Positions 17,987-64,000 of a DNA stretch of 64,000 nt are shown here, piece after piece (position 1 is the stretch's first letter; every line of letters starts with the position of its first letter). The stretch lies in the IMG/VR virus record IMGVR_UViG_3300042895_001344, positions 124,001 through 188,000 of that record. One strand, written 5' to 3'. The position numbers and the translations under genes are program-made. The notes beneath the pieces are model-generated. The model was given only the letters and a program-made list of their open reading frames with translations. It was not told the DNA's origin and did not search any database.

Positions 17987-18145
17987 ATGGAAAACACTCA
18001 AAAAAACGTTAAAATAAGTGGGAAACACCACGAAATGTTAAAAAATTACTGTGATAAAAACGGTTTAAAAATCTATAAAGTTTTAGAAAAACATATAGAA
18101 GAACTTTGTAAACCTAAAAAGAAGGACATATACGGGGATGATTAA
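17987..18145 (+). CDS. Small ribbon-helix-helix-like DNA-binding protein missed by the track (52 aa, MENTQKNVKISGKHHEMLKNYCDKNGLKIYKVLEKHIEELCKPKKKDIYGDD)
   Basis: Translated by hand. Strand-helix-helix pattern (VKIS...HEMLKNYC...LKIYKVLEKHI); TATTTAT at 17963-17969. Confidence 0.65.
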   Translation: MENTQKNVKISGKHHEMLKNYCDKNGLKIYKVLEKHIEELCKPKKKDIYGDD

Positions 18146-19404
18146 TAAAGATAAACAAAATCTAAAGTGGCACCGAATACAGGAGCACTTGTTAGTGTTA
18201 TTTGTTTTTGTCCTGTTATTTCATATCCCTCATCACTAAATTCAATAAGTCCATTTGTGGTAACACTAATAACACTATTAATCTTTTCTTGTAGATCAAA
18301 AACTAAGTTGACTCCATTGAAATTAAAACTTTCACGACCAACCTGTAGTTCATTACCGTTTTGGTCATACATTTTGTTATTTCTACCTTTATAGTAACTT
18401 ACAACAATTACATCACCTTGTAATGGGGTTCCGCTAAAATTTATGTTTGATAATCCCCCAAAATGAGAATGTGAATAATGTACGTCTTTTTCCTGTACAA
18501 TTCCATTAATTGATACGTTAAATAAAACTGTTATATTCTCACCTACACTATATATTGTACTAGTACCATTTGATATTAATGTGGCTAACGTTATATCAAT
18601 TGTTTTAGATATATATTTTTTAGTTAAACTACCTCCACCTTTCATCGATTCATTTACGATAAACGCTCGACTAATAGCTGGTTTAACCTCAAATTCATCA
18701 CTATCAATTAAAAACCCTAACATAGTACATTTATATGTTTGCATATAAAATCTACGACCATCAATTGTTTCCATAGGTGTATTGTCTTCTATTGTGTCTA
18801 AAACAATTGGAATATAATGACCTTTAACTTGAGTGTAATCTTGTCTAGATGAAAAATTTTGTAAAACTAATTTATTAAATTTATTTAAATCTCTAAACTT
18901 ATTACAAACAATAGTAATGTCGTATGTAATATCACATGGAATCGGTTGTGGTATTTTATAAATGTCAGCCCCCATAGAATTACCATTCCAAGTTGGAACC
19001 GTTGCATAGTGAAACTGATGTCTATCGGGAATAGTTCTTTGTATTGATGGGTTTGTACCAAACTGTACGTCAGGTTTTCTAATGATTGTAATAAATGGTA
19101 ATTTTACATTACCGTCAGAATCTGAAAATTCCCAATTGTTTGAAAATTCACCCCATCTTTGAATTGTTAATATTTTATCAATAACAGGTATTTGTACACC
19201 ATCAGATACAACTTTAAATGTATTTTTTACATAATCCAACATACCCCTATCTAAATCATCATGTAAAATAGAGTCAGGTAGAAAAGAATCGGATTTTGTA
19301 ATCATATCCAATAATTCCTCTCTTCTTTTTAATATACCTTCACCTTGGTAAGTATCCTTACCGCCGTAAACGTTGATCATGTTTTTTCTTTTAGGTATTC
19401 CCAT
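18142..19404 (-). CDS. Tail terminator/completion protein (gp15-like) with two appended beta-domains
   Basis: KLPFITIIR...PQPIPCDITYDITI...YIPI pattern; neck region. Probable start MGIPKRK at 19404, right after the upstream stop (track start is 19443). Confidence 0.6.
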   Translation of the reverse strand: MGIPKRKNMINVYGGKDTYQGEGILKRREELLDMITKSDSFLPDSILHDDLDRGMLDYVKNTFKVVSDGVQIPVIDKILTIQRWGEFSNNWEFSDSDGNVKLPFITIIRKPDVQFGTNPSIQRTIPDRHQFHYATVPTWNGNSMGADIYKIPQPIPCDITYDITIVCNKFRDLNKFNKLVLQNFSSRQDYTQVKGHYIPIVLDTIEDNTPMETIDGRRFYMQTYKCTMLGFLIDSDEFEVKPAISRAFIVNESMKGGGSLTKKYISKTIDITLATLISNGTSTIYSVGENITVLFNVSINGIVQEKDVHYSHSHFGGLSNINFSGTPLQGDVIVVSYYKGRNNKMYDQNGNELQVGRESFNFNGVNLVFDLQEKINSVISVTTNGLIEFSDEGYEITGQKQITLTSAPVFGATLDFVYLY

Positions 19405-53366: not shown

Positions 53367-54119
53367 ATGAAAATTATTGTTTCAAAGGAAGATAAAGAAT
53401 ATATAAACGAATGTCTTAAATCAGGTGAGGTTTTAAAAGAAGATCTTACAAGGTGGTTTAAAGAGAAGTGGGTAGATGTTAGTAAAAAGGTAGATGGTAA
53501 ACACCCACCTTGTGGTAGAAAAGATGCTGATGGTAAATCGTATCCTAAATGTAGACCTTCTAAAAAAGTGTCTAAAGAAACTCCAAAAGTTGCCTCTTCA
53601 TATGATAAAAAAGAAAAGAAAGCAATGACTTCACAAAAAAGAAGAGCAGAAAAGAAAGACCCTAAAGTGGGTAAGGGTAATAAACCAACAATGACTAAAT
53701 TTGATGAGAATATGGAAAAGAGAACAATAATTCAAATATCTGAAGATCAATTCGAAAGACTATTTGAATACAACGAAGAAACTCCTGTATTGATATATGA
53801 GGATGAGTTTGGATCAATAGAAAATACTAAATTTGAATACGACTTAGGTCTTTTAAATGAGGCTGAGTATCAAGGACGTAAAGTTCAACTTGGTAAAATC
53901 ATGCAAGGGGACGTAAAGAAATCAAAAGTTTATGTTAAGAACGATAAAGGTAAAGTCGTTAAAGTAAACTTTGGTTTTGGTGGTAAATCCGCTAAAGGTA
54001 AACGAATGGTTATTAAGAAAAATAACCCTGCAAGACGTAAATCATTTAGAGCACGTATGAATTGTGATAATCCAGGTCCTCGTTGGAAACCAAGATATTG
54101 GGCTTGTAGAACTTGGTAA
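53367..54119 (+). CDS. Modular basic protein (probable internal head protein)
   Basis: LKE then DLTRWFKEKWVD...PCGR...YPKCRP module; LNE then AEYQGRKV...RRKSFRARMNC...RYWACRTW module. Confidence 0.7.
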   Translation: MKIIVSKEDKEYINECLKSGEVLKEDLTRWFKEKWVDVSKKVDGKHPPCGRKDADGKSYPKCRPSKKVSKETPKVASSYDKKEKKAMTSQKRRAEKKDPKVGKGNKPTMTKFDENMEKRTIIQISEDQFERLFEYNEETPVLIYEDEFGSIENTKFEYDLGLLNEAEYQGRKVQLGKIMQGDVKKSKVYVKNDKGKVVKVNFGFGGKSAKGKRMVIKKNNPARRKSFRARMNCDNPGPRWKPRYWACRTW

Positions 54120-54416
54120 TTAAATTAATTTTTGATTAGATATAAAGTATACCCTATCGGACGCATAGAGACCTTTATAGGACGCCTCTTTCTTTTCCAC
54201 TAACTTACCCATCTGTATTAAATGAAGACCGTTTTTAAGGTCTATTCCCACTAATAAACGACCTTGCCACTTTTCGTAGGTTGTTTCACGCACATATTTT
54301 CCCTCATCGTCCATTTTGAGGTGTTCAATCATCACTTCTTTTTTAATTTTACACGTAATCCCCCTCTCATCTATGAGTTTGGTTAAGACGTCTAATCGTA
54401 GATTTTCGTATTCCAT
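54120..54416 (-). CDS. Small protein with SAP/HeH-like N-terminus, host-type promoter
   Basis: YENLRLDVLTKLIDERGI...KEVMIEHL pattern; TATATTTG at 54421-54428 on the minus strand. Confidence 0.55.
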   Translation of the reverse strand: MEYENLRLDVLTKLIDERGITCKIKKEVMIEHLKMDDEGKYVRETTYEKWQGRLLVGIDLKNGLHLIQMGKLVEKKEASYKGLYASDRVYFISNQKLI

Positions 54417-54420
54417 AACA

Positions 54421-54428
54421 CAAATATA
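54421..54428 (-). promoter_or_regulatory. Bacteroidota -7 element TATATTTG
   Basis: Exact TAnnTTTG with TTGG further upstream. Confidence 0.65.
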
Positions 54429-54450
54429 CTATATTTTTTAGAATATACCA

Positions 54451-54484
54451 AAAATAAAAAACCCCCGATTTCTCGAGGGTTTTT
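54451..54484 (-). terminator. Intrinsic terminator after major capsid gene
   Basis: AAAAACCCTCGA-GAAA-TCGGGGGTTTTT then T-tract on the minus strand. Confidence 0.85.
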
Positions 54485-54503
54485 CGTGATATTCCTATTA
54501 AGA

Positions 54504-56261
54504 TTATCTTAATGTATCTAAACCAAACACTTGGATACCTTGTACATCGATTACACCGAAGTAACGGTTGTTCACCATTTTCTTTGCGTAACGTGTCATG
54601 ATACCTTTGATTGGAGTCATGTTGAATGGATTGTACATTGTAGGAGTTAATTGTAATGGCACATATGGTGCGTATACATAACCTGCATCTAACAATGATT
54701 TTCCTTTATGACCGATCAAGATTTTGTTAGCTGGGAAGTAAGGATCACGATACACTTGGTAACGACCACCTACTGTACCGATTTTCTCGATACCCATGTT
54801 ATATTGATCTTGTTCTGGTTCTGCGTTAGAAACGTGGAAATACTCTAAATCATCGAATACTGCAGAAACTTCTGAAGAAACAACGATCCAGTTAGCACCA
54901 CCTCTTAACGTAGTTTTGTGGATTTGAGCAGAAATTTGGTTGATTTTTGTAACCAAAGTTTGGTTCCAATCTTTTTGAGTGTAACCTTGTAAAGTTGAGT
55001 TTCCAGATCCACCGTATTTCCATCCATTGTAATCCCATTTAGCTTTCCATGCTGCACCTTTACGTAAGTCACGTAAGATTTCACGGTCAACCTCAGCAGC
55101 GATTTGCTCTGATAATAAAGCTGTCAATTCAGCTTCAGCGTCGATGTTGTGGAACGCACTAACATCTTGTGCTAATTCTGGAGACCAGCTAGCTCTTAAT
55201 TTTCTTTCAGTTACAGAAACTGTTACTGATTCTAAATCAAAAGATACTTCACCAATTTGATCTTCAAACTCCAAAGTATCGTACTTGCGATAAGAAGCGT
55301 TGAATTCTGTTCTTGCTAAAGTTGAACCTGTTACTTCGTAATCAGAAAAACCCGAAGTTGGGTCGTATTTTTGTAAATCTACTTGTACATAGATTTTACC
55401 GTCAGTATCACAAATATCGTAGAAATTTTGTGTTGCGTTAGTTGTTTTAGCACCGTATTCTACAATACCTTTACCGTACTTTTGAGTAACGATATTGATT
55501 GGTAATGAAGTACCTGTAGTTGCACCTAAGAAAGCTAATAAGTTAGCATCTGAAGTGAAAACTTGTAATGAAGCTAAGAATTCTTCAGAATCCATTTCAT
55601 TACCGTCTGGTCCTTTCAATTTACCTGCACCTGCAGATTCAAATCCTTCTAATTCTAAAATTACATAAGATTTAGTTGTACCGGTATTAATAGCAGATGT
55701 ACTTGTAGTAACTTCACCGTTAGAGAAAGTTGTGAAACCATTTACAGTTAATGCGCTAACAGAATAAGCACCTTTTGAATAATCAAAAAGACCTTGTTCT
55801 AAGTCGTCATTAGCTTCGTAGAAACGATCGTAAAGATTCTTAGCACCTGTATTATAACCTGCTGTTGCAGCGTCAGAGTTACCTGGCATACCGTAAGGAG
55901 AGTAATGACCGTTAGCGTCAGTTCTCTCTTGGATTTTAGGTACGAAGAAGAACAATTTACCGATTGGTAAGTTCATAGCTTGTACAGACACGATGTCGTT
56001 AGCTAATAATTTAGAGAATACACGACGAATGATAGGGAAAACTACAGTCTCGAAAGAACCAGACGCATCAGCTACTGCTGCTTCGTTGATTAAGTAAGAC
56101 GCTTGGTTTTCATACAATTGCGCGATGTTATCTTTTTGGTGACCACCAAGACCCTCTAAGAATCCTAATTCGTCCCATTTTTTAATGGTATCTTCTTTGA
56201 TAACTCTAAGGTGCTTAAGACCTATGTTACCAACCATACCGCTTTCTAATAATGCTCCCAT
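54504..56261 (-). CDS. gp23: Major capsid protein (T4 gp23-like)
   Basis: IVSVQAMNLPIG, ERKLRASWSPELAQD, AEAELTALLSEQIAAEVDREIL, DAGYVYAPYVPL, KGIMTRYA. Confidence 0.97.
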   Translation of the reverse strand: MGALLESGMVGNIGLKHLRVIKEDTIKKWDELGFLEGLGGHQKDNIAQLYENQASYLINEAAVADASGSFETVVFPIIRRVFSKLLANDIVSVQAMNLPIGKLFFFVPKIQERTDANGHYSPYGMPGNSDAATAGYNTGAKNLYDRFYEANDDLEQGLFDYSKGAYSVSALTVNGFTTFSNGEVTTSTSAINTGTTKSYVILELEGFESAGAGKLKGPDGNEMDSEEFLASLQVFTSDANLLAFLGATTGTSLPINIVTQKYGKGIVEYGAKTTNATQNFYDICDTDGKIYVQVDLQKYDPTSGFSDYEVTGSTLARTEFNASYRKYDTLEFEDQIGEVSFDLESVTVSVTERKLRASWSPELAQDVSAFHNIDAEAELTALLSEQIAAEVDREILRDLRKGAAWKAKWDYNGWKYGGSGNSTLQGYTQKDWNQTLVTKINQISAQIHKTTLRGGANWIVVSSEVSAVFDDLEYFHVSNAEPEQDQYNMGIEKIGTVGGRYQVYRDPYFPANKILIGHKGKSLLDAGYVYAPYVPLQLTPTMYNPFNMTPIKGIMTRYAKKMVNNRYFGVIDVQGIQVFGLDTLR

Positions 56262-56283
56262 TTTTAATATTGGTTTTAATTTT

Positions 56284-57582
56284 TTATTTTATTTTTCTCA
56301 TCATTTCTTTAATTCTACTGAATTGAGGATTTTCATAAGCTTTTGACTCAGATAATACCTCTGTAGAAGAAGATGTTGATGGAGTGTTAGAGATTTTTTT
56401 CGCAACTGATTCGGTAACCGTAGTTTTTGAACCTAATTCAGTTTTGATTGTTGAGAATAAAGACTTAGCTTCATTCATAGTAGAAACTGTATCAAATCTC
56501 TTTAATATATTCAATTTCTCTTGTTTTGTAGTTGAATGTTCAGTAAACAAACGTGTAGCGTAAGCTAAGTTTGCATTGAATACTGCAACTTCATTTAGTT
56601 TATCCTTGAATAATACTAACGCCTTTTTATATTCAGCATTTTGTTTTTTCAATGTTTCAACTTGTTCGTTGATACCTGAACCCGCTTTGTACATTTTTTT
56701 AGATGGTAAACCAGCTCTTTTCATACCGTTCTTGTTTCCATGAGGGTTTGATTTTGTACGTGCAGCTTCTGTAGCTTCAACTTTTTTAGGTTCTTCAACC
56801 TCGTCTTCCTCGTCTAATTCGATTTCATAGATAGTTTCTTCGTCAGCTTCTAATTCGTCTTCAGCATCAACATCTTCCATATCGGTTTCTGTATCAACAT
56901 CAGATTCTAAATCAGAATCAACGTCTGTATCCATTCCACTCATATCAACGTCGGAATCAACGTCAGAATCAACATCTGTATCTAAGTCAGCTCCCATGTC
57001 CATTCCAGTATCAAGATCAGAATCTTCACTATCTAATTTGATAATGTATTCATTTTCTCCGTCACCGAATTCGACATTGTTACCGTCTTTTTTAACTACA
57101 ATACCATCTTCTGGTTTCATAGCCTTGAATACTTTAAGAACTTCATCGTCTGAAGCACCTGTCATATCCATAACGTCTTCATCATCCATTGAACCTTCGT
57201 CACTCATAGATTCCATATCAGTACCCATATCGGTACCCATGTCATCCATGTCAACATCAGTGTCAACATCCGAATCAACGTCATCTGTTGAGTCTAAGTT
57301 ATCGAGGTCTGTATCTGTATCAACATCTGTATCAACGTCTTCTTCAGATTCATCATCTGTGTCTTCGTCGTCAGCTGTTACATCTTGTTCTGCCTCTTCT
57401 TCAGGTTTAGCAACTTCTTCATCAGTTGTTGTTTCTTCCTCTTCTTCCAATGATTCTTTTAGCAAATCTTTAAGTTCTTCCTTCATTGTTGAAGCAAGTA
57501 TACCTTTTGCATTTTGCTTTACGGCCTCTTCAAGATTTTGTACTTGAAGTAACGCTTGTTCTAAAATTGATTTTTCGCTCAT
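56284..57582 (-). CDS. Prohead core scaffold protein with long acidic linker
   Basis: Between protease and MCP; helical ends, Asp-rich repeats, LNEVAVFNANL motif, many LxE sites. Confidence 0.8.
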   Translation of the reverse strand: MSEKSILEQALLQVQNLEEAVKQNAKGILASTMKEELKDLLKESLEEEEETTTDEEVAKPEEEAEQDVTADDEDTDDESEEDVDTDVDTDTDLDNLDSTDDVDSDVDTDVDMDDMGTDMGTDMESMSDEGSMDDEDVMDMTGASDDEVLKVFKAMKPEDGIVVKKDGNNVEFGDGENEYIIKLDSEDSDLDTGMDMGADLDTDVDSDVDSDVDMSGMDTDVDSDLESDVDTETDMEDVDAEDELEADEETIYEIELDEEDEVEEPKKVEATEAARTKSNPHGNKNGMKRAGLPSKKMYKAGSGINEQVETLKKQNAEYKKALVLFKDKLNEVAVFNANLAYATRLFTEHSTTKQEKLNILKRFDTVSTMNEAKSLFSTIKTELGSKTTVTESVAKKISNTPSTSSSTEVLSESKAYENPQFSRIKEMMRKIK

Positions 57583-57609
57583 TGTGAAAATTAATTGTTT
57601 TTATTACCT

Positions 57610-57617
57610 TATAAATA
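57610..57617 (-). promoter_or_regulatory. Late motif TATTTATA
   Basis: Upstream of scaffold-MCP operon. Confidence 0.75.
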
Positions 57618-57671
57618 CTACGATTTATTAAAAAATCGTGTTTTTTAATGTTCCTGCCCCTAAAAAGTTTA

Positions 57672-58355
57672 TTATTTAGATAGAAATGTATCTAAATTGC
57701 CCATAAGTTTAGACATTCTACTGTCAAGTGTTGGTTTCTTAATTTCCGCTTCTTGATATTGGTCTCTTTCTGATGGGTCTTTAAAAATATAAGCACCGGG
57801 AGTTGATGGTGATGATACTAAATCAAAACAAACTAATTCGAAATCATCTTGTACGATGTTTTCTCCTTTAACTTGTTTAAGTGATCCTACACCACGTGAA
57901 GAGATACCTAAAGTTGCCCCGTTCATTAATAACATCGCAGCTTGATCTCCTTTGGTTGAAACGATACCCATCTTCTTCCATCCAGGAGAAGTGAATAACT
58001 TGATTTTACCCATAAGGATTCTACCGTCCCACCAAGTTTCTAAAATTGAATGTGATACTCGATCTAAATCGATTAGTGAAGATGAAGGGTGATTTAATTC
58101 ATTTAATGCTCCACCCTTTTTAATTAGTGATTGATATTTTTCGTTTTCTCTCTTAAGTAACATTTCAGGATATATCCTTCCGTTCTTATTTGGAGTATCG
58201 AATTTTTGTAAAACAGCATAAAGGATTAGATCTTCAGAGAAGTCCACACCCTTCATTTCCTGTATAATTTTTTTATTCTCTTCTGGAGATACGTGTCCTG
58301 CGTCGTATTCTATTAAAATTCCTGTTCCAAGTTCTTTGGGTCCTAATATCTTCAT
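57672..58355 (-). CDS. gp21: Prohead maturation protease (gp21-like)
   Basis: PNKNGRIYP, ELNHP (His), LGISSRGVGS (Ser), FDLVSSPSTPGA. Confidence 0.95.
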   Translation of the reverse strand: MKILGPKELGTGILIEYDAGHVSPEENKKIIQEMKGVDFSEDLILYAVLQKFDTPNKNGRIYPEMLLKRENEKYQSLIKKGGALNELNHPSSSLIDLDRVSHSILETWWDGRILMGKIKLFTSPGWKKMGIVSTKGDQAAMLLMNGATLGISSRGVGSLKQVKGENIVQDDFELVCFDLVSSPSTPGAYIFKDPSERDQYQEAEIKKPTLDSRMSKLMGNLDTFLSK

Positions 58356-58371
58356 TTATAGATTTTATTAC

Positions 58372-58379
58372 TATAAATA
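58372..58379 (-). promoter_or_regulatory. Late motif TATTTATA
   Basis: Upstream of protease. Confidence 0.75.
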
Positions 58380-58393
58380 CATCGATATCCCTA

Positions 58394-58819
58394 TTATTTT
58401 TTGGATTTGTAGAAATTGAATAGATTTTTGTCAGAAAGTCCATCTTCTATTACCATAGATAGAATATCTTTTACGTTATTTTTAATTTCTTTTGATTTAA
58501 CGTCGAACTGTTTATCAACATATAATGTGATTTCTAAGTTCATAAAAGATCTTTTTTCTAATTTAATTCCCTTTGTTCTAATATCTAAATCAACAATAGA
58601 TTGTTGTTTAAAATAAGGGTTCTTAAGATTATAAATTATTTCTTTAACCTTTCGTCTTGATTTATGAATCATATGATCAAAATCATCAGTCTCATTTTCG
58701 GCTTGTACCCATGAGTTTAATTTCAAATAAATGGTTTTAAGATTCTTAAAATCTACGGTACCATAACCGATCTTTACATCATTGTAAATCCCTAATGGGA
58801 TATACTTACCTGTTTTCAT
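58394..58819 (-). CDS. Hypothetical protein (141 aa)
   Basis: Clean ORF in the head cluster, divergent from rpsU. Confidence 0.7.
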   Translation of the reverse strand: MKTGKYIPLGIYNDVKIGYGTVDFKNLKTIYLKLNSWVQAENETDDFDHMIHKSRRKVKEIIYNLKNPYFKQQSIVDLDIRTKGIKLEKRSFMNLEITLYVDKQFDVKSKEIKNNVKDILSMVIEDGLSDKNLFNFYKSKK

Positions 58820-58896
58820 TAATATTTCATATTATTATTTCTTATGGTGTTTTTAAAAAATAACTAAAATACTTGGAATAACCAAAAATAATTTCA

Positions 58897-58904
58897 TATA
58901 TTTG
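58897..58904 (+). promoter_or_regulatory. Bacteroidota -7 element TATATTTG upstream of rpsU
   Basis: Exact TAnnTTTG with CTTGG further upstream. Confidence 0.65.
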
Positions 58905-58909
58905 TTGTA

Positions 58910-58917
58910 TATTTATT
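58910..58917 (+). promoter_or_regulatory. Late motif TATTTATT
   Basis: 4 nt before rpsU ATG. Confidence 0.65.
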
Positions 58918-58921
58918 ATAT

Positions 58922-59113
58922 ATGATTATTATAGACTTATCTAAAGAAAAAAGTATTGAGACAGCGTTAAGAACTTATAAACAAAAAGTTCAAAAAACAA
59001 AGCAAGTTCAAAAATTGAGGGAAAGACAACAGTTCGTAAAACCTTCCGTTAAAAAAAGAACTGAAAAATTAAAAGCAGTTTATTTACAACAAAAAAGAAA
59101 TGGACTTAGTTAA
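58922..59113 (+). CDS. rpsU: Ribosomal protein bS21
   Basis: SIETALRTYKQKV...LRERQQFVKPSVKKR...KAVY matches bS21 (ALKRYKRK...FxKPS), Bacteroidota type. Confidence 0.92.
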   Translation: MIIIDLSKEKSIETALRTYKQKVQKTKQVQKLRERQQFVKPSVKKRTEKLKAVYLQQKRNGLS

Positions 59114-59843
59114 GTCCATTTTTTAATTCGTTTAATCTGTAGTAATTGTATCTCGACGGAAACATTTGATTTACTTCATCTTTAACAGCATTTAATTTAT
59201 TTATTAAATCCGTTTCATTTGATTCACTTAAAAGTGTTGATACTTGACTTACAATTGATTCTTTTAATTCAGTTGTTTTGGTGATGATCTCATCATAAGG
59301 AATAGATAAGATATTTTTTAATTCTTCTTTTTGTGATTCTGATAATGTATTAGAATAAAGAGCGTTAAAATTGTTTGTTAACACCGCATTTAATAAATTT
59401 TCATTTGGTATCAAGGTTGAATCTTTAGATTCTTTAATTTCTTTTTTGGTTGTTAAATGATTTACTAAATTCTTTTTTGCATTAACCTTCTTTTCAATAT
59501 TTGATAGACTATCTTTTTCAATTAAGATATCTAATGAATTGTATATTTCATTTTCATTAATTGCCTCTACGTTTATCATTTTATTTAATGATGTACAAAA
59601 TGTAGTTAAATCATCCATTTGTTGTTTTAAGATACTAATAACTCCCTCGACGTATAACTTTGCGGTTTCTTTATCGTCAATATATTTGTTTTCAATTTCT
59701 TCATAAAACAAATACATTTCTTTAAAATTTTTATTTTCTTTAATTGTTGTTAAAATATTTTTAATCTCACCTTTATTTTCATTGGTGTAAGATTCAGTTA
59801 ACTTGTTTAATAATTTGGTTTTAATGACCCCGAATTTGTTCAT
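59106..59843 (-). CDS. Helical prohead-core-type protein
   Basis: Directly after portal; helical, with LTE/LSE/LKE/LNE sites. Confidence 0.55.
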   Translation of the reverse strand: MNKFGVIKTKLLNKLTESYTNENKGEIKNILTTIKENKNFKEMYLFYEEIENKYIDDKETAKLYVEGVISILKQQMDDLTTFCTSLNKMINVEAINENEIYNSLDILIEKDSLSNIEKKVNAKKNLVNHLTTKKEIKESKDSTLIPNENLLNAVLTNNFNALYSNTLSESQKEELKNILSIPYDEIITKTTELKESIVSQVSTLLSESNETDLINKLNAVKDEVNQMFPSRYNYYRLNELKNGLN

Positions 59844-59845
59844 GT

Positions 59846-61687
59846 TTAATCGTTTAAGATATCATTTATTTTTGTCTCTATTTCATAAATATTCTGTTGA
59901 GCTTTTTCCATATCAAACAGAATATTAAAATCTTCTTTTTCTTCACCTAACATACCAAGTATTTTAGATTTTTTTGATTTTTTAGCTAATGTAGATTCAC
60001 TCAAAGGTTCCTCTCCTCCACCCGCTGGTGGCGGTGGTGCTCCACCTCCCATATCCATTCCTCCACCTCCCATATCCATTCCTCCACCCGCTTCTGCTCC
60101 TGCGGCTTCCATTGCCTTTTCTCTATCCTCTTCAGGAATACCATACTTAGCATCTACCTCATCAAATACACCTGAACGTTTAATAACATTCTGAGTATTC
60201 GTTAATTCAAATCCTAATGCACGTTCTAAACGTTGTTGTTGTAAGTCTAACATAACTTCACTATCACTAAATCCAAGGATATTTTTCTTAGCCCATGTAT
60301 GTGATACTGGTAAGATACCCACTTGAGATTGATCCGATGTTGCGTCTTTATAAAGTGTTACTTTTTCTTTCCATTGTTCAATACGTAATAAATCAGATTG
60401 TGCTGATGGGTTAGTTAATGATAATGAGAAATTATTTAATTCATCCTCCATACCTAAAAGGTATAATTGAATTAATGCAATTTTATTTAATTCTTGAATA
60501 ACAGATTTTTGAATTCTATTAATAGTTCTAGCAAAACGAATATCCATTAAAGCTAAACTCTTACCTTCACCGACAACTTCTTCAAATCCTAAGAACGCTT
60601 TAGGTATACGTAATGCGGCTAACATCTTCTTTTGAATGTATTCAATATCAGCAATCTCTCCTAAGTTTTGTGCTCCTGGTAATGTTTCAATTGGATTAGA
60701 TTGTGATGGATCACGAACAGGAATAAAATAATCCTGATCAACAGCCATTTGATTATATCTCATATCGACTTGACCGTTACGTGGATCTGAAATCTGATCT
60801 CTTTTAAATTTGTTTGCAACACGTTGTACGTAAGATTCAATATCCTTATCATCCATATTACCAACGAATACTTTGAATACACGTCTTTCAGGTGCTCTTG
60901 ATGTTCTATAGATTAACATGGCATCTTCAGCAAGTAAAAGTTGTTTCCAAATACGTCTAATTTTATCTAACATAGAAGTACCGTAAGGTAACTTTCTATC
61001 ATCACCTAATAATCTAAAGTGAGCAATTTCCCATGCTTGAAATTCCAAATCTTTGTTCTTCCATTGAAAACGTAATTCTCTTGATGGAACTTTTAAATCT
61101 CTATTTTGTGTTGTGGTCTTACCCGCGGCACCTTCAATTCTTTCAATTTCAATATTTGGTAATTGTTGACATCCGATGATACCTTTTTCGGGATCTAACT
61201 TTAAATAAACAAAGTTGTCACCATACTTACAAACACCTCTAGTCCACATTTGTAAGTTAGTATTAACGTCTAATCTGTTATTAAATAAATCTTCTAATAT
61301 TTCTTTAATTCTATCTGATTCAGAATAGATCGTTAAAATTTGACCCTTTTCAGACATTGTAGTGGATTCTTCCGCATATATGTCTAACGCTGCAGATATT
61401 TCAGGAGTAAACTCCATCGCCTCATAATCGTAATAAGCTGCTAATCTATTTGGTTCATAATAAACCGATTGGTTATAGAGAGATTGGTCTAATTTAGTCC
61501 ATTTATCAGCGATGTATTGACTCTGTTGAGCCTGTAACATTGCCTTATCATAATCTTCTTTGTTATCTGTTTTTAATAATTCATCTTTACTGAAATTAAA
61601 TGAAGGTGCCTGTGTTACCTGAGGTTTCCCTGGGTACCCAAACATCTTTGTTAATTTCTGAAATACAGTTAAATTTTGATTTGCCAT
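59846..61687 (-). CDS. gp20: Portal protein (T4 gp20-like)
   Basis: PEISAALDIYAEE, IAHFRL, PYGTSML, LLLAEDAMLIYRTSRAPERRVF, DYFIPVR, IETLPGAQNLGEIADIEY. Confidence 0.97.
   Translation of the reverse strand: MANQNLTVFQKLTKMFGYPGKPQVTQAPSFNFSKDELLKTDNKEDYDKAMLQAQQSQYIADKWTKLDQSLYNQSVYYEPNRLAAYYDYEAMEFTPEISAALDIYAEESTTMSEKGQILTIYSESDRIKEILEDLFNNRLDVNTNLQMWTRGVCKYGDNFVYLKLDPEKGIIGCQQLPNIEIERIEGAAGKTTTQNRDLKVPSRELRFQWKNKDLEFQAWEIAHFRLLGDDRKLPYGTSMLDKIRRIWKQLLLAEDAMLIYRTSRAPERRVFKVFVGNMDDKDIESYVQRVANKFKRDQISDPRNGQVDMRYNQMAVDQDYFIPVRDPSQSNPIETLPGAQNLGEIADIEYIQKKMLAALRIPKAFLGFEEVVGEGKSLALMDIRFARTINRIQKSVIQELNKIALIQLYLLGMEDELNNFSLSLTNPSAQSDLLRIEQWKEKVTLYKDATSDQSQVGILPVSHTWAKKNILGFSDSEVMLDLQQQRLERALGFELTNTQNVIKRSGVFDEVDAKYGIPEEDREKAMEAAGAEAGGGMDMGGGGMDMGGGAPPPPAGGGEEPLSESTLAKKSKKSKILGMLGEEKEDFNILFDMEKAQQNIYEIETKINDILND
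60040..60088. repeat. 21-bp tandem repeat in portal C-terminal tail
   Basis: CTCCACCTCCCATATCCATTC twice plus a partial copy; encodes GMDMGGG. Confidence 0.85.
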
Positions 61688-61691
61688 TCTA

Positions 61692-61699
61692 TATAAATA
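61692..61699 (-). promoter_or_regulatory. Late motif TATTTATA
   Basis: 4 nt before portal ATG. Confidence 0.75.
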
Positions 61700-61741
61700 C
61701 TTTTCTTTATAATATAAACTAAAATAATGATAAACTAAACA

Positions 61742-63520
61742 TTATCTACGTTTACCAAATAACCAAGAATTCTCTTGATATGTTTGTTTACTGACATTCA
61801 TATTATTATCTCGATAATATAAATTATTATTATCCGTTCCCATTGAACCTATTTGATCAAATGCGGTACCATATGAATAGAATGATTTACTTGTCTCATA
61901 TGATCTTTCACTCATAGTCCAAGAATCTAACATTGCTTTGTTCGCATTTTCGTTCTTTTGTAATAAATTAAATGATACATCCGCAGCATATAAAGCCATT
62001 GACATACCCATAATAGCATCATCATGTGTTCCTTTCATATGATCAGGTCTACCGTTCATATAAACAAACGTGTTAAGTTCGTTTAATAATCTTGCAGATC
62101 TAACAATAAATCCTTTTCTAAGTTGTTCCTCAAATGCTGCAACAATTTGAGTTCTTTTGTTGTTAAAGTTAAGACCTGGTATTTTCTCCATCGCCTTAGC
62201 GTTATAGTCCCAAATGTTTTGAGTATTAACACCCTCAACGTATACGTTTTTGTAATTTAACTCAGTTAATTTTCTTGATGTTGCAACTCCCATTCCACCT
62301 GTAATATCCGTTACAATAAACGCATTACCATATAGGATAGCCCATTTGTATGCAACTGCCGCTAAGTCATCGGGAGGTATTTTACCAATATATTCTGCAA
62401 CCTGTTCCCTATCATCAAAATCTATAATTGATATAGCCGAAAAATCCTCACTATCTCCTCTACTAACATCCACACCCATAATATAACGATGACCAATTAT
62501 TGGTTCTTTCCATTGCCAAAACGTAGCCTGCATGTATTTTTCAATAGGTTCTCTAATCATGTTTTTAGCAATATTCTCTTGAATATCACCAGGGATAACA
62601 CCATCTCCCGAACCTAAGAAATCACATTCCAACTCCTGAGCAATTTTACGTCTATCGTATTTAAATTTCTTAGACATTGACTCAAACCACGAAGAAAATG
62701 GTTTATAACCATCCTCTAAAAGTTTGTTATATTCTTTCATATCAAAATCATGTAAAACAACTTCATCGTCATTATATTGTTCTCTATTCAACATGTAATG
62801 ACAGATGTCCTGACATTTAACCCAATGTAAATCTTTGGTGTAACGAGGGTCTTTAAACCACCTTAAATCTGTTATATGGAAATCATTGATTCCACGTAAT
62901 GCTTGGTCGTAAACACCGTAATAGATAGGGTCATAACCATTTGGAGTGGAGATAAGAATAATCTTACCACCCGTTGATAGGGACGCCATAGATGCTGCCC
63001 AAAAATCATCACCTGCTTCAATATATGCTGCCTCATCAAATACAAGTATGGTAGGTGTATAACCACGAAGGGCATCCGCTGAAGTTGCAACCGCCTTAAC
63101 CTCACAACCATTATTTAATCTAAATCTACTCTCTGAGTTTTTATCAGGTGAGAACCCAACATTTAACCATTCAGGCCATTGTTCCAAGAAGTGTCTAACC
63201 TTATTAGCCATCTCCACCGCAGTATCACGTTTGTTTGCAATAAGTAGAACTCTCTCAGGATTATCGGGTTTTGCTAATTGTAATTTTTTTGATAACCATG
63301 CGGCCGTTACTGTTGTTACACCCGCCTGTCTATATTTTCTTGTAATGTTTTCGTTGTAATCTTCGTAGTCCTTTATTAGTTGAATTTGATCTTCAAACAG
63401 GTCCATTGGGACATACTTCTTCTGTGTATTATCGAATGTTTGTAAATACGTTCTAAGTGCATACGGAGTATCTTTTATAATCTTTGCATACTCAATTAAT
63501 TGTTCCGTTCTGGTATTCAT
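61742..63520 (-). CDS. terL: Terminase large subunit
   Basis: RQAGVTT (Walker A variant), LVFDEAA (Walker B), ISTPNG, MGVDVSRG, HDD. Confidence 0.95.
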   Translation of the reverse strand: MNTRTEQLIEYAKIIKDTPYALRTYLQTFDNTQKKYVPMDLFEDQIQLIKDYEDYNENITRKYRQAGVTTVTAAWLSKKLQLAKPDNPERVLLIANKRDTAVEMANKVRHFLEQWPEWLNVGFSPDKNSESRFRLNNGCEVKAVATSADALRGYTPTILVFDEAAYIEAGDDFWAASMASLSTGGKIILISTPNGYDPIYYGVYDQALRGINDFHITDLRWFKDPRYTKDLHWVKCQDICHYMLNREQYNDDEVVLHDFDMKEYNKLLEDGYKPFSSWFESMSKKFKYDRRKIAQELECDFLGSGDGVIPGDIQENIAKNMIREPIEKYMQATFWQWKEPIIGHRYIMGVDVSRGDSEDFSAISIIDFDDREQVAEYIGKIPPDDLAAVAYKWAILYGNAFIVTDITGGMGVATSRKLTELNYKNVYVEGVNTQNIWDYNAKAMEKIPGLNFNNKRTQIVAAFEEQLRKGFIVRSARLLNELNTFVYMNGRPDHMKGTHDDAIMGMSMALYAADVSFNLLQKNENANKAMLDSWTMSERSYETSKSFYSYGTAFDQIGSMGTDNNNLYYRDNNMNVSKQTYQENSWLFGKRR

Positions 63521-63525
63521 ATATG

Positions 63526-63533
63526 TATAAATA
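63526..63533 (-). promoter_or_regulatory. Late motif TATTTATA
   Basis: 5 nt before terL ATG, just after a terminator. Confidence 0.75.
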
Positions 63534-63534
63534 C

Positions 63535-63564
63535 AAAAAAAGGTGGTTATTGTAAACCACCTTT
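63535..63564 (-). terminator. Intrinsic terminator upstream of terL
   Basis: Stem aaaggtggtt / aaccaccttt followed by a T-tract on the minus strand, then the late motif. Confidence 0.8.
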
Positions 63565-63567
63565 GTA

Positions 63568-64000
63568 TTATTTCGTAGGTCTGTCTAACCCTAACTCGTC
63601 AAATAGACTGTCATCATCATCTTCTTCATCATTACCACCACTTGGTAAATCAACACCTAAATTATTTAAAAAACCCTTTAATTCATCGTTATCAGTTTCA
63701 TCACTTATACCTGTTAAGTCCTCGTCAAATTCCGCCATCGTTTGTTCGTAATCGTAATTGTTGATGTCCTCTTCAATTGCACGAACCAATGTTTCCATTA
63801 AACGATTTCCATTCTCAGAATTAGAAACTATTTCTTTCATGAATACTAAGAATTCCTTTGCTGGTTTTTTGAATATATGTTGGAATACCATTAATTGAAT
63901 AATTCCTTTATCTTCATCTGTCAATACATCTTCAGGGAATTTAGATCTAATTCTATCCCAAATTGCAGGTCCTAAACGTAAATCCCACATTTCTTTTTCC
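63568..64000 (-). CDS. C-terminal part of a hypothetical protein (5' end outside the window)
   Basis: Frame stays open to the window edge; acidic C-terminus. Confidence 0.7.
   Translation of the reverse strand, partial: EKEMWDLRLGPAIWDRIRSKFPEDVLTDEDKGIIQLMVFQHIFKKPAKEFLVFMKEIVSNSENGNRLMETLVRAIEEDINNYDYEQTMAEFDEDLTGISDETDNDELKGFLNNLGVDLPSGGNDEEDDDDSLFDELGLDRPTK

What the first reader, a model, noticed from the sequence alone, without database searches (positions are those of the whole stretch)
58860..59113. Phage bS21 with dual promoter, no SD, and retained Tyr54
Seen: rpsU is inserted antisense inside the head operon and overlaps the next gene's 3' end by 8 nt. Its upstream region has both a host -7 element (TATATTTG) and the late motif, and no Shine-Dalgarno. 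Residue 54 is Tyr (KAVY). No other gene here shows an SD. Known: phage bS21 genes next to structural genes have been described in Bacteroidota phages; in Flavobacterium, bS21 Tyr54 helps occlude the anti-SD and host rpsU is autoregulated through its own SD. Inference: the phage copy escapes autoregulation and keeps ribosomes in the ASD-occluded state that suits SD-less phage mRNAs.
Basis: partly seen in the sequence, partly recalled or inferred. Interest (0 to 1): 0.6.

Follow-up and report, generated by a model that had tools for sequence, protein, structure and literature searches.

The report
Phage-encoded ribosomal protein bS21 cassette
A large lake-water phage of Bacteroidota carries its own ribosomal protein bS21 gene, which is already published for this phage group; new here is that the gene is a self-contained unit with a host-style promoter, no Shine-Dalgarno site and a two-way terminator.

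Summary
The gene is real. It is a 63-codon bS21 ORF at 58922-59113 (+), on the opposite strand within the T4-like head gene cluster of a ~330-kb freshwater myophage. It aligns without gaps to F. johnsoniae bS21, so Tyr54 is equivalent. Nothing SD-like lies upstream, in this copy or in 40 relatives' distinct upstream sequences. The phage as a whole is SD-depleted.

The arrangement, the Tyr54 retention and the Bacteroidota host were all published by Chen et al. 2022 (ISME Commun), so the core finding is a rediscovery.

What I add:
- **Promoter.** The conserved promoter is a host sigma-A type -7 box (TATATTTG), kept in 36 of 38 relatives at 17-18 nt from the ATG.
- **Late motif.** The genome's late motif is TATTTATA. 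rpsU carries only a one-mismatch copy (TATTTATT), and 19 of 38 relatives have lost it, while the neighbouring head genes keep the exact motif. 'Dual promoter' is therefore weakly supported.
- **Overlap.** The 8-nt overlap lies in a conserved hairpin that scans as a terminator on both strands, shows one compensatory change, and encodes the C-termini of both convergent genes.
- **Operon.** The cluster is not a single operon.

The idea that the SD-less phage copy escapes the host's SD-based bS21 feedback is logical and fits McNutt et al. 2023. It has not been tested. Interest is modest.

The parts
58897..58904 (+). Host sigma-A type -7 promoter box TATATTTG (fits the revised consensus TAHHTTTG). 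The predicted transcription start is about A58909, giving a 13-nt leader.
   Evidence: Read directly. TAHHTTTG is kept in 36 of 38 distinct relatives, 17-18 nt from the ATG in 34, while the flanking bases vary. The exact 8-mer occurs in 5 oriented upstream regions of the contig against 0.39 expected, with no reverse-complement cases. The consensus and the 4-5 nt spacing to the start site come from Baez 2019. The start site is inferred, not measured.
58910..58917 (+). Late-like motif TATTTATT, one mismatch from the genome's late motif TATTTATA, 4 nt from the ATG.
   Evidence: TATTTATA is 36-fold enriched in oriented upstream regions. It peaks 3-7 nt from start codons, and 6 of the 8 start-proximal TATTTATT copies lie 3-6 nt away. 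Across 38 distinct relatives the rpsU site is exact in 8, TATTTAT[TCG] in 11 and absent in 19. The orthologous protease, scaffold and portal sites are exact in 28/31, 24/26 and 28/29. Function here is uncertain.
58922..59113 (+). rpsU: 63-aa phage bS21 of the Bacteroidia type. Tyr54 is the codon at 59081-59083 and residue 55 is Leu.
   Evidence: Pfam S21 E 1.1e-11. The best solved relative is F. johnsoniae bS21 (7JIL_z, E 1.2e-10, gapless 1-62). All 38 distinct relatives are 63 aa with Y54. dN/dS is about 0.11. The C-terminal half resembles the bacterial protein; the N-terminal helix carries phage-specific residues.
59095..59124 (.). Bidirectional intrinsic-terminator-like hairpin that holds both stop codons and the 8-nt gene overlap (59106-59113).
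   Evidence: It scans as terminator-like on both strands. Folding energies are -13.9 and -14.1 kcal/mol, z -5.7 and -5.0, with 0 of 200 shuffles as good. It is present in all 37 distinct relatives, with a compensatory change GGACTT/AAGTCC to GGTCTT/AAGACC. It encodes ...NGLS* in bS21 and ...NGLN* in the convergent gene.
59106..59843 (-). Convergent 245-aa hypothetical gene, probably the 'bS21_CN' family of Chen 2022. It ends inside the same hairpin.
   Evidence: ORF. No Pfam or PHROG match. Present next to rpsU in the relatives. Chen 2022 reports a conserved neighbour on the opposite strand that co-varies with bS21 and is missing from outgroup phages without bS21. Identity with that family was not tested by sequence.
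58883..58890 (-). Second -7-like box TATTTTTG on the opposite strand, back to back with the rpsU box and facing the 141-aa gene.
   Evidence: Read directly. CAAAnnTA is kept at this place in 27 of 41 distinct sequences, and the CCAAAAA block is conserved. Function is inferred.
58394..58819 (-). Divergent 141-aa hypothetical gene, first gene of the downstream head unit (then protease, scaffold, MCP).
   Evidence: ORF. No confident family match. It has no late motif in most relatives. A conserved 3-codon uORF at 58819-58830 abuts its start codon.
61692..61699 (-). Late motif TATTTATA of the portal gene, given as a reference example. The others are at 63526-63533 (TerL), 58372-58379 (protease) and 57610-57617 (scaffold).
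   Evidence: These four are the only - strand copies in 54001-64000, and each lies just upstream of a head gene. They are conserved in relatives.

Best explanation
This is the bS21 gene of a roughly 330-kb freshwater T4-like myophage that infects Bacteroidota, a member of the already described 'bS21 phage' group.

**Anatomy.** The gene is an autonomous, moron-like cassette placed between two late head-gene transcription units.
- It has its own host sigma-A type -7 promoter (TATATTTG), with a predicted start near 58909.
- Its 13-nt leader is unstructured, A-poor and has no SD.
- The 63-codon ORF is under strong purifying selection.
- It ends in a hairpin that scans as a terminator in both directions. 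That hairpin would also end the convergent portal/245-aa unit.

**Protein.** It keeps the C-terminal, 16S-binding half of Bacteroidia bS21, including Tyr54 and a hydrophobic residue 55. It carries a phage-specific N-terminal helix.

**Mechanism (inferred).**
- The protein most likely assembles into host 30S subunits at the platform and keeps the anti-SD tucked away.
- Its mRNA lacks the extended SD through which many Bacteroidia make bS21 only when ribosomes lack it. Its synthesis should therefore not be feedback-limited.
- The result would be ribosomes kept replete and efficient on the phage's SD-less mRNAs.

The sequence features and their conservation are measured. Promoter and terminator activity, ribosome incorporation and the effect on translation are all inferred.
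For: - **Identity and equivalence.** Pfam S21 match; gapless alignment to 7JIL bS21 with Y54 and L55. Jha 2021 names Tyr54 (stacks on A1534) and Ile55 (van der Waals contact) as the bS21 contacts to the 3' tail.
- **Selection.** dN/dS is about 0.11 over 49 distinct coding sequences. All 38 distinct proteins are 63 aa with Y54.
- **Phage group.** The record is 217,142 bp at 65% estimated completeness. Relatives' contigs reach 335-351 kb. GC is 31.6%. The sequence occurs in lake-water runs. The gene order matches Chen 2022.
- **Bacteroidota-type expression signals.** SD is depleted (4 of 215 genes). Positions upstream of start codons are A-rich, with A at -3 in 59% of genes. TAHHTTTG boxes are used.
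- **Promoter.** The -7 box is conserved in 36 of 38 relatives at fixed spacing. The same TATATTTG-N17-ATG layout precedes a ClpP homologue elsewhere on the contig.
- **Terminator.**
- **No SD.** None in 41 distinct upstream sequences, where the minimum duplex energy is -5.4 kcal/mol. Eight of 47 sampled Bacteroidia rpsU genes reach -7 or lower, and one reaches -21.6. The two bacterial bS21 closest to the phage protein (Saprospiraceae) carry AAGGAG upstream.
- **Literature.** Host autoregulation through an extended SD, and poorer initiation on SD-less mRNAs when bS21 or its C-terminus is missing.
Against: - There is no direct evidence of ribosome incorporation or of any effect on translation.
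- The start site is not mapped. RNA contigs from four lake metatranscriptomes cover the rpsU region only thinly (depth 2.5-4.8, in two of four runs), against hundreds to thousands for MCP and scaffold, and contigs cannot show transcript ends or strand.
- The rpsU initiation region scores at only the 10th percentile of the phage's own start-site profile, with 5 A in 20 nt against a median of 11. Translation may be weak.
- The host is unknown, and SD-based rpsU autoregulation is not universal in Bacteroidia. In my crude scan with one canonical 16S tail, only 8 of 47 sampled genes showed an SD.
- Chen 2022 tie expression to the late stage, which a host-type promoter alone does not explain.
- The -33 TTG is poorly conserved (14 of 41).
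Confidence: 0.6

Rival explanations
1. Selective hijack, the hypothesis of Chen 2022. The phage bS21 displaces host bS21, and its divergent N-terminal helix makes ribosomes prefer phage transcripts over host transcripts during late protein production. This does not exclude the best explanation.
For: In my sample the N-terminal helix residues are class-specific. The residue sets of 38 phage and 44 Bacteroidia sequences do not overlap at positions 7, 9, 10, 14, 17, 18, 21 and 30, and they barely overlap at 23, 24, 27 and 28. Positions 38-56 are shared. Chen 2022 report the same pattern and high bS21 transcription alongside structural genes.
Against: No phage-specific mRNA feature that such a ribosome could recognise was found. 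Phage start regions look like ordinary Bacteroidia SD-less, A-rich ones. No binding or selectivity data exist. The divergence could equally reflect relaxed or different constraints.
Confidence: 0.3
2. True dual (or late-only) promoter. The TATTTATT element 4 nt before the ATG acts as a late promoter, so rpsU is made from a leadered early transcript and a nearly leaderless late transcript.
For: The element is one mismatch from the late motif and sits in the preferred register. Six of the 8 TATTTATT copies near starts lie 3-6 nt from an ATG, as do 16 of 29 TATTTATA copies. Chen 2022 saw bS21 RNA together with late genes. A TATTTAT[AT] match in these 20 nt by chance is unlikely, since there are only 114 copies in 434 kb of both strands.
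Against: The element has drifted to TACTTATA, TAATTATA and similar forms in 19 of 38 relatives, whereas exact TATTTATA is kept at the neighbouring late genes in 80 of 86 cases. TATTTATT shows no orientation bias near starts: 8 copies against 7 for its reverse complement. A second + strand copy lies inside the neighbouring gene at 59198.
Confidence: 0.25
3. Extraribosomal role. The small basic protein acts off the ribosome, for example as an RNA-binding regulator of neighbouring genes or as a decoy against a host defence that stalls translation.
For: Chen 2022 raise counter-defence and virion packaging as possibilities. The gene is tightly linked to the convergent 245-aa gene of unknown function.
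Against: The residues kept are those that bind 16S rRNA in the solved ribosome, namely the KPSV motif, R46, L50, K51, A52 and Y54. Per McNutt 2023's summary, another phage bS21 (HTVC008M) enters E. coli ribosomes; I did not read the original paper.
Confidence: 0.1
4. Neutral passenger: a recently captured host gene with no role for the phage.
For: None beyond its cellular origin.
Against: dN/dS is about 0.11. Length, position, promoter box and terminator are fixed across hundreds of relatives: 205 confirmed viral loci and 613 protein clusters.
Confidence: 0.02

Closest known systems
bS21-encoding freshwater Bacteroidetes myophages, clades a-e (Chen et al. 2022, ISME Commun, PMC9723584)
   Same: bS21 lies on the reverse strand between two hypothetical genes, inside the TerL, portal, prohead protease and MCP block. 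Genomes are about 293-331 kb with GC 31-34%, from lakes, with a Bacteroidetes host signal. Tyr54 is retained and the N-terminal helix is divergent. The region is not transcribed as one operon.
   Different: Nothing essential differs. The paper's main text does not use the words 'promoter' or 'terminator' and mentions SD only in general terms, not for the phage gene. The host-type -7 box, the bidirectional terminator and the absence of an SD are therefore added detail. Placement of this contig in their TerL clades was not tested.
F. johnsoniae bS21 / rpsU with anti-SD sequestration and SD-dependent autoregulation (Jha 2021 PMC7797042; McNutt 2023 PMC9976891)
   Same: The protein has the same fold class and length. 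The alignment is gapless, with 27 of 62 residues identical. Tyr54 and a hydrophobic residue 55 are kept.
   Different: The host gene carries an extended SD (pairing down to about -20 kcal/mol) that lets bS21-free ribosomes translate it. The phage gene has none (+0.8 kcal/mol). The N-terminal helix differs at many positions.
Pelagibacter phage HTVC008M bS21 and other viral ribosomal proteins (Mizuno et al. 2019)
   Same: A phage-encoded bS21 in a large myovirus. The HTVC008M protein is reported to enter E. coli ribosomes, as cited.
   Different: The host phylum differs, and there is no Bacteroidia-type Tyr54 / anti-SD occlusion context. I did not compare the sequences. This rests on the literature summary.
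T4 head gene cluster (gp20, gp67, gp68, gp21, gp22, gp23) and T4 late promoters (TATAAATA)
   Same: Portal, protease, scaffold and MCP occur in the same order, with two small genes between portal and protease. An 8-bp A/T late motif lies close upstream of the late genes.
   Different: The motif, read in the direction of the gene, is TATTTATA, the reverse complement of the T4 word. An opposite-strand rpsU cassette is inserted. There are no SDs. The T4 facts are from my own knowledge and were not tested here.
Phage morons (autonomous promoter-gene-terminator insertions)
   Same: A single cellular-type gene with its own host-type promoter and its own terminator sits between two phage late units, on the opposite strand.
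   Different: Classical morons are described in temperate phages and are expressed from the prophage. This is a large lytic-type myophage, and the gene is fixed across the whole lineage.

Membership tests
Ribosomal protein bS21 (Pfam PF01165) | Sequence match above the curated threshold | tested here: met
   44.7 bits against a cut-off of 27, E 1.1e-11, residues 6-54. The PHROG 'ribosomal protein S21' family matches at E 8.8e-7.
Bacteroidia-type bS21 (anti-SD occluding) | Signature Tyr at position 54 (F. johnsoniae numbering), followed by a hydrophobic residue that contacts the 16S 3' tail | tested here: met
   The alignment to 7JIL_z is gapless, with Y54 and L55. Y54 is present in 38 of 38 relatives, and residue 55 is V, I or L. 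The roles of the residues come from Jha 2021.
Bacteroidia-type bS21 (anti-SD occluding) | Physical incorporation into the 30S platform with the 3' tail sequestered | not testable with these tools
   This needs ribosome purification with mass spectrometry, or cryo-EM.
bS21 phages of Chen et al. 2022 | bS21 on the reverse strand between two conserved hypothetical genes, within the TerL/portal/protease/MCP block | tested here: met
   compared with the description.
bS21 phages of Chen et al. 2022 | Genome about 293-331 kb, GC 31-34%, freshwater, Bacteroidetes host | tested here: met
   217 kb at 65% completeness. Relatives reach 335-351 kb. GC is 31.6%. Lake-water runs hold 72-98% of the sampled words. 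SD depletion and TAHHTTTG boxes fit the host. The host itself is inferred.
bS21 phages of Chen et al. 2022 | Placement inside clades a-e in the TerL tree | not tested
Bacteroidia sigma-A promoter | -7 element TAHHTTTG | tested here: met
   TATATTTG at 58897-58904, conserved in 36 of 38 relatives. Consensus from Baez 2019.
Bacteroidia sigma-A promoter | Transcription start 4-5 nt downstream of the box, and activity with host RNA polymerase | not testable with these tools
   Only assembled RNA contigs were available, with no 5' ends.
This phage's late promoter class | Exact TATTTATA close upstream of the start codon, conserved in orthologues | tested here: not met
   The rpsU site is TATTTATT. 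In relatives it is exact in 8 of 38 and absent in 19 of 38, against 80 of 86 for the portal, protease and scaffold sites.
Intrinsic (rho-independent) terminator, bidirectional | Stable G+C-containing hairpin followed by a T-run on each strand | tested here: met
   Termination activity itself was not tested.
SD-autoregulated rpsU of Bacteroidia | Extended SD complementary to the 16S 3' tail upstream of the start codon | tested here: not met
   +0.8 kcal/mol for this gene. The minimum over 41 distinct phage upstream sequences is -5.4, and none reaches -7. The phage gene does not belong to the autoregulated class.

The most novel reading that the evidence does not exclude
The phage does more than escape the host's bS21 feedback: it exploits it. 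The phage protein is made from a host-type promoter and an SD-less leader, so it fills every bS21-free 30S subunit. That removes the only ribosome species that translates the host's SD-led rpsU mRNA efficiently. Host bS21 synthesis therefore shuts itself off, and the ribosome pool is progressively converted to the phage version, with its altered N-terminal helix. This would happen ahead of a burst of late mRNAs, many of which may be leaderless, because the late motif sits 3-7 nt from their start codons.
Probability: 0.15. Interest if true: 0.7.

Novelty: already known. Interest (0 to 1): 0.33.

Why it matters
bS21 is the ribosomal protein most often carried by phages. In Bacteroidia it is the switch that hides the anti-SD, and it is also the sensor of its own synthesis.

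If the phage copy really bypasses or exploits that loop, it would be a compact example of a virus rewiring a ribosome-based feedback circuit. The strains and reporters needed to test this already exist for F. johnsoniae: the rpsU depletion, deltaC and Y54A strains and the GFP reporters described in McNutt 2023.

The cis-regulatory anatomy found here offers concrete handles for those tests and qualifies two published inferences:
- A host-type promoter suggests that expression need not be strictly late.
- The conserved C-terminus of phage bS21 may be constrained by the terminator hairpin and the overlapping gene, not only by ribosome binding.

The finding itself is a rediscovery of a published arrangement.

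Tried and rejected
- **Nucleotide search of the head region against the phage collection:** no match. A protein search with bS21 found only four huge uncultured phages at 47-52% identity.
- **Relatives of a virus record:** they are not drawn by the genome search, and a locus cannot serve as a centre. I reached bacterial genomes through loci found in genome contigs instead.
- **RNA evidence:** the six RNA runs found are held only as assembled contigs. Laying four of them showed MCP and scaffold strongly and the rpsU region thinly. They give no 5' or 3' ends and no strand, so promoter use and timing remain open.
- **SD in host rpsU:** I scanned 47 sampled Bacteroidia genes against one canonical 16S tail with automatically chosen start codons. 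Only 8 reached -7 kcal/mol or lower. This is cruder than the published organism-specific analysis, because many Flavobacteriales have altered anti-SDs. I treat my scan as inconclusive on how widespread autoregulation is.
- **The 245-aa and 141-aa neighbours:** Pfam and PHROGs gave nothing usable.
- **E. coli-type sigma-70 promoter reading:** rejected. Hits in the region are no more frequent than in shuffles, 39 against 45 +/- 7.
- **-33 TTG at 58873:** present, but conserved in only 14 of 41 sequences.
- **Not run:** structure prediction, complex prediction and the large representative protein search. The protein's identity was not in doubt, and bS21 binds mainly RNA.
- **Literature:** a search found no paper linking phage bS21 to the missing SD or to autoregulation, apart from the speculation in McNutt 2023.
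Full report
**What is there**

The window is bases 124001-188000 of a 217,142-bp IMG/VR virus record, estimated 65% complete, with 31.6% GC. The ORF at 58922-59113 (+) encodes 63 aa and matches Pfam Ribosomal_S21 (E 1.1e-11, 44.7 bits against a cut-off of 27). It is the only S21 match on the record.

All neighbours from 54120 to 63990 lie on the - strand:
- TerL, 61742-63520
- T4-type portal, 59846-61687
- a 245-aa hypothetical, 59106-59843
- a 141-aa hypothetical, 58394-58819
- prohead protease, 57672-58355
- an acidic scaffold-like protein, 56284-57582
- gp23-type MCP, 54504-56261

The closest cultured relatives by MCP are distant, at about 38% identity: Microcystis phage Mel-JY01 and Flavobacterium phage immuto. 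Near-identical DNA occurs in many lake-water metagenomes. The bS21 protein has 205 confirmed relatives in IMG/VR and 613 protein clusters in the large collection, on contigs of up to 335-351 kb.

**Checking the observation**

- **Overlap.** The 8-nt 3' overlap (59106-59113) is exact.
- **Tyr54.** Residue 54 is Tyr, at codon 59081-59083. The best solved relative is F. johnsoniae bS21 (7JIL chain z, E 1.2e-10), and the alignment is gapless over 1-62, so Tyr54 is the equivalent residue. Residue 55 is Leu where F. johnsoniae has Ile. Jha et al. 2021 show that Tyr54 stacks on A1534 and that Ile55 makes van der Waals contact with the sequestered 3' tail.
- **No SD.** The best duplex of the 20 nt upstream with the anti-SD is +0.8 kcal/mol. 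None of 41 distinct upstream sequences (this copy plus 40 relatives) contains even GGA, GAG or AGG within 20 nt of the ATG.
- **Genome-wide SD.** Only 4 of 215 called genes have GGAG, GAGG or AGGA at -18..-4, fewer than in windows further upstream (7-27). SDs are depleted, not merely absent. One gene in the window (18142-19404, with a weak tail-fibre PHROG hit) has GAGGAG at canonical spacing. I treat that as a chance case.
- **Start-codon context.** Positions upstream of start codons are A-rich, with A at -3 in 59% and at -11 in 65% of genes. This is the pattern reported for F. johnsoniae.

**Promoters**

The genome's late motif is TATTTATA.
- It occurs in 26 oriented upstream regions against 0.72 expected, with only 5 in the opposite orientation.
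- Within 54001-64000 its four - strand copies sit exactly upstream of TerL, portal, protease and scaffold.
- Its distance to the start codon peaks at 3-7 nt.

Upstream of rpsU there are two elements.
- **Host-type box.** TATATTTG at 58897-58904 fits the Bacteroidia sigma-A -7 consensus TAHHTTTG. Transcription there starts 4-5 nt downstream of the box (Baez 2019). That predicts a start at about A58909 and a 13-nt leader.
- **Late-like element.** TATTTATT at 58910-58917 is one mismatch from the late motif and lies 4 nt from the ATG.

Conservation separates the two.
- Among 38 distinct relatives the -7 box is kept in 36, and it lies 17-18 nt from the ATG in 34, although the bases just after it vary freely.
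- The late-like element is exact in 8, TATTTAT[TCG] in 11 and absent in 19, mostly as TACTTATA or TAATTATA.
- In the same loci the true late motifs of protease, scaffold and portal are exact in 28/31, 24/26 and 28/29.
- TATTTATT shows no orientation bias near starts, 8 copies against 7, and a second + strand copy lies inside the neighbouring gene.

The conserved promoter of rpsU is therefore the host-type one. A working late promoter in this particular phage is possible but unproven.

The exact word TATATTTG precedes only five genes on the contig, against 0.39 expected. One of them is a ClpP homologue with the same 17-nt spacing to its ATG. A second -7-like box on the other strand (TATTTTTG, 58890 to 58883), kept in 27 of 41 sequences, faces the 141-aa gene.

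**The overlap is a terminator-like hairpin**

- Positions 59095-59124 form a 13-bp hairpin followed by a T-run on both strands. It scans as terminator-like in both directions.
- It folds at -13.9 and -14.1 kcal/mol, with z of -5.7 and -5.0 and none of 200 shuffles as stable.
- It contains both stop codons and encodes ...NGLS* in bS21 and ...NGLN* in the convergent gene.
- All 37 distinct relatives keep it. About 15 of them carry the compensatory pair GGACTT/AAGTCC to GGTCTT/AAGACC, and one has a different hairpin at the same place.
- Other terminator-like hairpins lie before the TerL promoter (63539-63564) and after MCP (54456-54485).

The 'head operon' is therefore at least two units, TerL-portal-245aa and 141aa-protease-scaffold-MCP. 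rpsU sits in the gap between them as its own promoter-gene-terminator cassette. This fits Chen et al.'s RNA observation that the region is not transcribed as one operon.

It also offers a second explanation for the conserved C-terminus of phage bS21, which they attributed to ribosome binding. Those codons are constrained at once by a hairpin and by the overlapping gene.

**The protein**

- Selection is strongly purifying, with dN/dS about 0.11 over 1137 pairs.
- Against 44 Bacteroidia bS21 sampled from two orders, positions 38-56 are shared: F38, KPSV at 40-43, R46, L50, K51, A52, Y54 and Q56.
- The N-terminal helix carries phage-specific residues. The residue sets do not overlap at positions 7, 9, 10, 14, 17, 18, 21 and 30. 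This repeats Chen et al.'s result.
- The bacterial proteins found by shared peptides were from two Saprospiraceae MAGs, whose C-terminal half is 17/22 identical to the phage protein (by eye from the two sequences) and which carry AAGGAG upstream, and from Blattabacterium.

**Comparison with what is known**

Chen et al. 2022 describe exactly this:
- 47 freshwater phage genomes of 293-331 kb with GC 31-34%;
- bS21 on the reverse strand between two hypothetical genes, inside the TerL/portal/protease/MCP block;
- predicted Bacteroidetes hosts;
- Tyr54 in 54 of 61 sequences;
- RNA detected together with structural genes.

The core of the finding is therefore already known. Their main text does not use the words 'promoter' or 'terminator', and it mentions SD only in general terms, not for the phage gene.

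McNutt et al. 2023 show the following for F. johnsoniae:
- rpsU has an extended SD.
- Ribosomes lacking bS21 or its C-terminus translate rpsU faster.
- Y54A gives about 3-fold derepression.
- Such ribosomes are worse on SD-less mRNAs.

They speculate about phage bS21 but do not note the missing SD. Two 2026 follow-up papers do not mention phages, and a search for the combination of terms found nothing else.

**Mechanism**

The features measured in the sequence and conserved across relatives are:
- a Bacteroidia-type bS21 with the anti-SD-contacting residues;
- a conserved host-type promoter box;
- an SD-less, unstructured leader (fold z +1.2);
- a conserved hairpin that scans as a terminator on both strands.

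The following steps are inferred:
- The protein enters host 30S subunits and keeps the anti-SD sequestered.
- Because its mRNA lacks the SD sensor, its synthesis is independent of ribosome bS21 occupancy.
- Ribosomes therefore stay replete and efficient on SD-less phage mRNAs.
- A corollary is that filling bS21-free subunits would also turn down host rpsU translation.

The caveats are:
- The rpsU initiation region is A-poor and scores at the 10th percentile of the phage's own profile.
- RNA contigs cover it only thinly, in 2 of 4 lake metatranscriptomes.
- The host order is unknown. By the literature, SD-based autoregulation ranges from about 80% of Flavobacteriales to none of Bacteroidales.
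- My own scan with a single canonical 16S tail found a strong SD in only 8 of 47 sampled rpsU genes, and I regard it as too crude to settle the point.

**Verdict**

The phenomenon is published. The increments are the promoter class, the terminator and the explicit contrast with host autoregulation. They are useful for designing experiments but not surprising to a specialist.

Noticed in passing
Whole contig; in the window e.g. 61692-61699 (portal), 63526-63533 (TerL): The late motif TATTTATA or TATTTATT ends only 3-7 nt before the start codon in 19 of 37 start-proximal cases. If transcription starts 4-6 nt after the motif, as at host -7 boxes or T4 late promoters, many late mRNAs, including portal and TerL, would be leaderless or nearly so. 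This could bear on why a phage tunes the ribosome platform.
   Followed up: partly
window 58819-58830 (- strand): A 3-codon uORF (ATG AAA TAT TAA) has a stop that overlaps the start codon of the 141-aa gene (TAATG). The same start-abutting mini-uORF, with variable codons, occurs in 26 of 31 distinct relatives, and 2 more have the stop directly adjacent (my reading of the five listed exceptions). Only 2 of the contig's 215 genes show the pattern. This suggests termination-reinitiation coupling in an SD-less system.
   Followed up: partly
window 58843-58850 and 58854-58863: TTATGGTG (CACCATAA on the - strand) and TAAAAAATAA are almost invariant blocks in the rpsU / 141-aa intergenic region of all relatives. 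They lie in the predicted 5' leader of the 141-aa gene. Their function is unknown.
   Followed up: no
G000:C1:84022-84699 (locus L138): A ClpP protease homologue (Pfam CLP_protease, E 1.4e-54) is preceded by the same TATATTTG box at the same 17-nt spacing as rpsU. Two cellular-type genes thus share the rare host-type promoter. McNutt 2023 speculated that such phages might encode a protease aimed at host bS21.
   Followed up: partly
window 18142-19404 (- strand): This is the only gene in the window with a canonical SD (GAGGAG, 6 nt before the ATG, -8.4 kcal/mol). It has a weak tail-fibre PHROG hit. It is probably chance, but in principle it would be translated better by bS21-free ribosomes.
   Followed up: partly
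Contig-wide, e.g. window 61713-61721 region upstream of the portal late motif: A third upstream word, TTATATTAT / TATATTAT, is about 12-fold enriched before a dozen genes, several with a TTTG about 20 nt further upstream. It may be a further promoter class, such as early or middle.
   Followed up: no
L085, L086 (Saprospiraceae MAGs): The bacterial bS21 reached by shared peptides come from Saprospiraceae. Their C-terminal half is 17/22 identical to the phage protein (by eye from the sequences), including KAVYLQQKR, and AAGGAG lies upstream of their start codons. This is a hint about the donor or host lineage, but a weak one.
   Followed up: partly
window 54401-57600: In four lake metatranscriptome assemblies, contigs matching MCP and the scaffold gene have summed depths of hundreds to thousands. 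Protease, the 141-aa gene, rpsU and the 245-aa gene are at 0-15. Many of the contigs are 90-95% identical, so several related phages contribute.
   Followed up: no
window 54424-54463 (- strand), upstream of the 98-aa gene 54120-54416: Directly after the MCP terminator lie two -7-like boxes, TATTTTTG and TATATTTG. The second is only 4 nt from the ATG, which would give a leaderless transcript from a host-type promoter.
   Followed up: no
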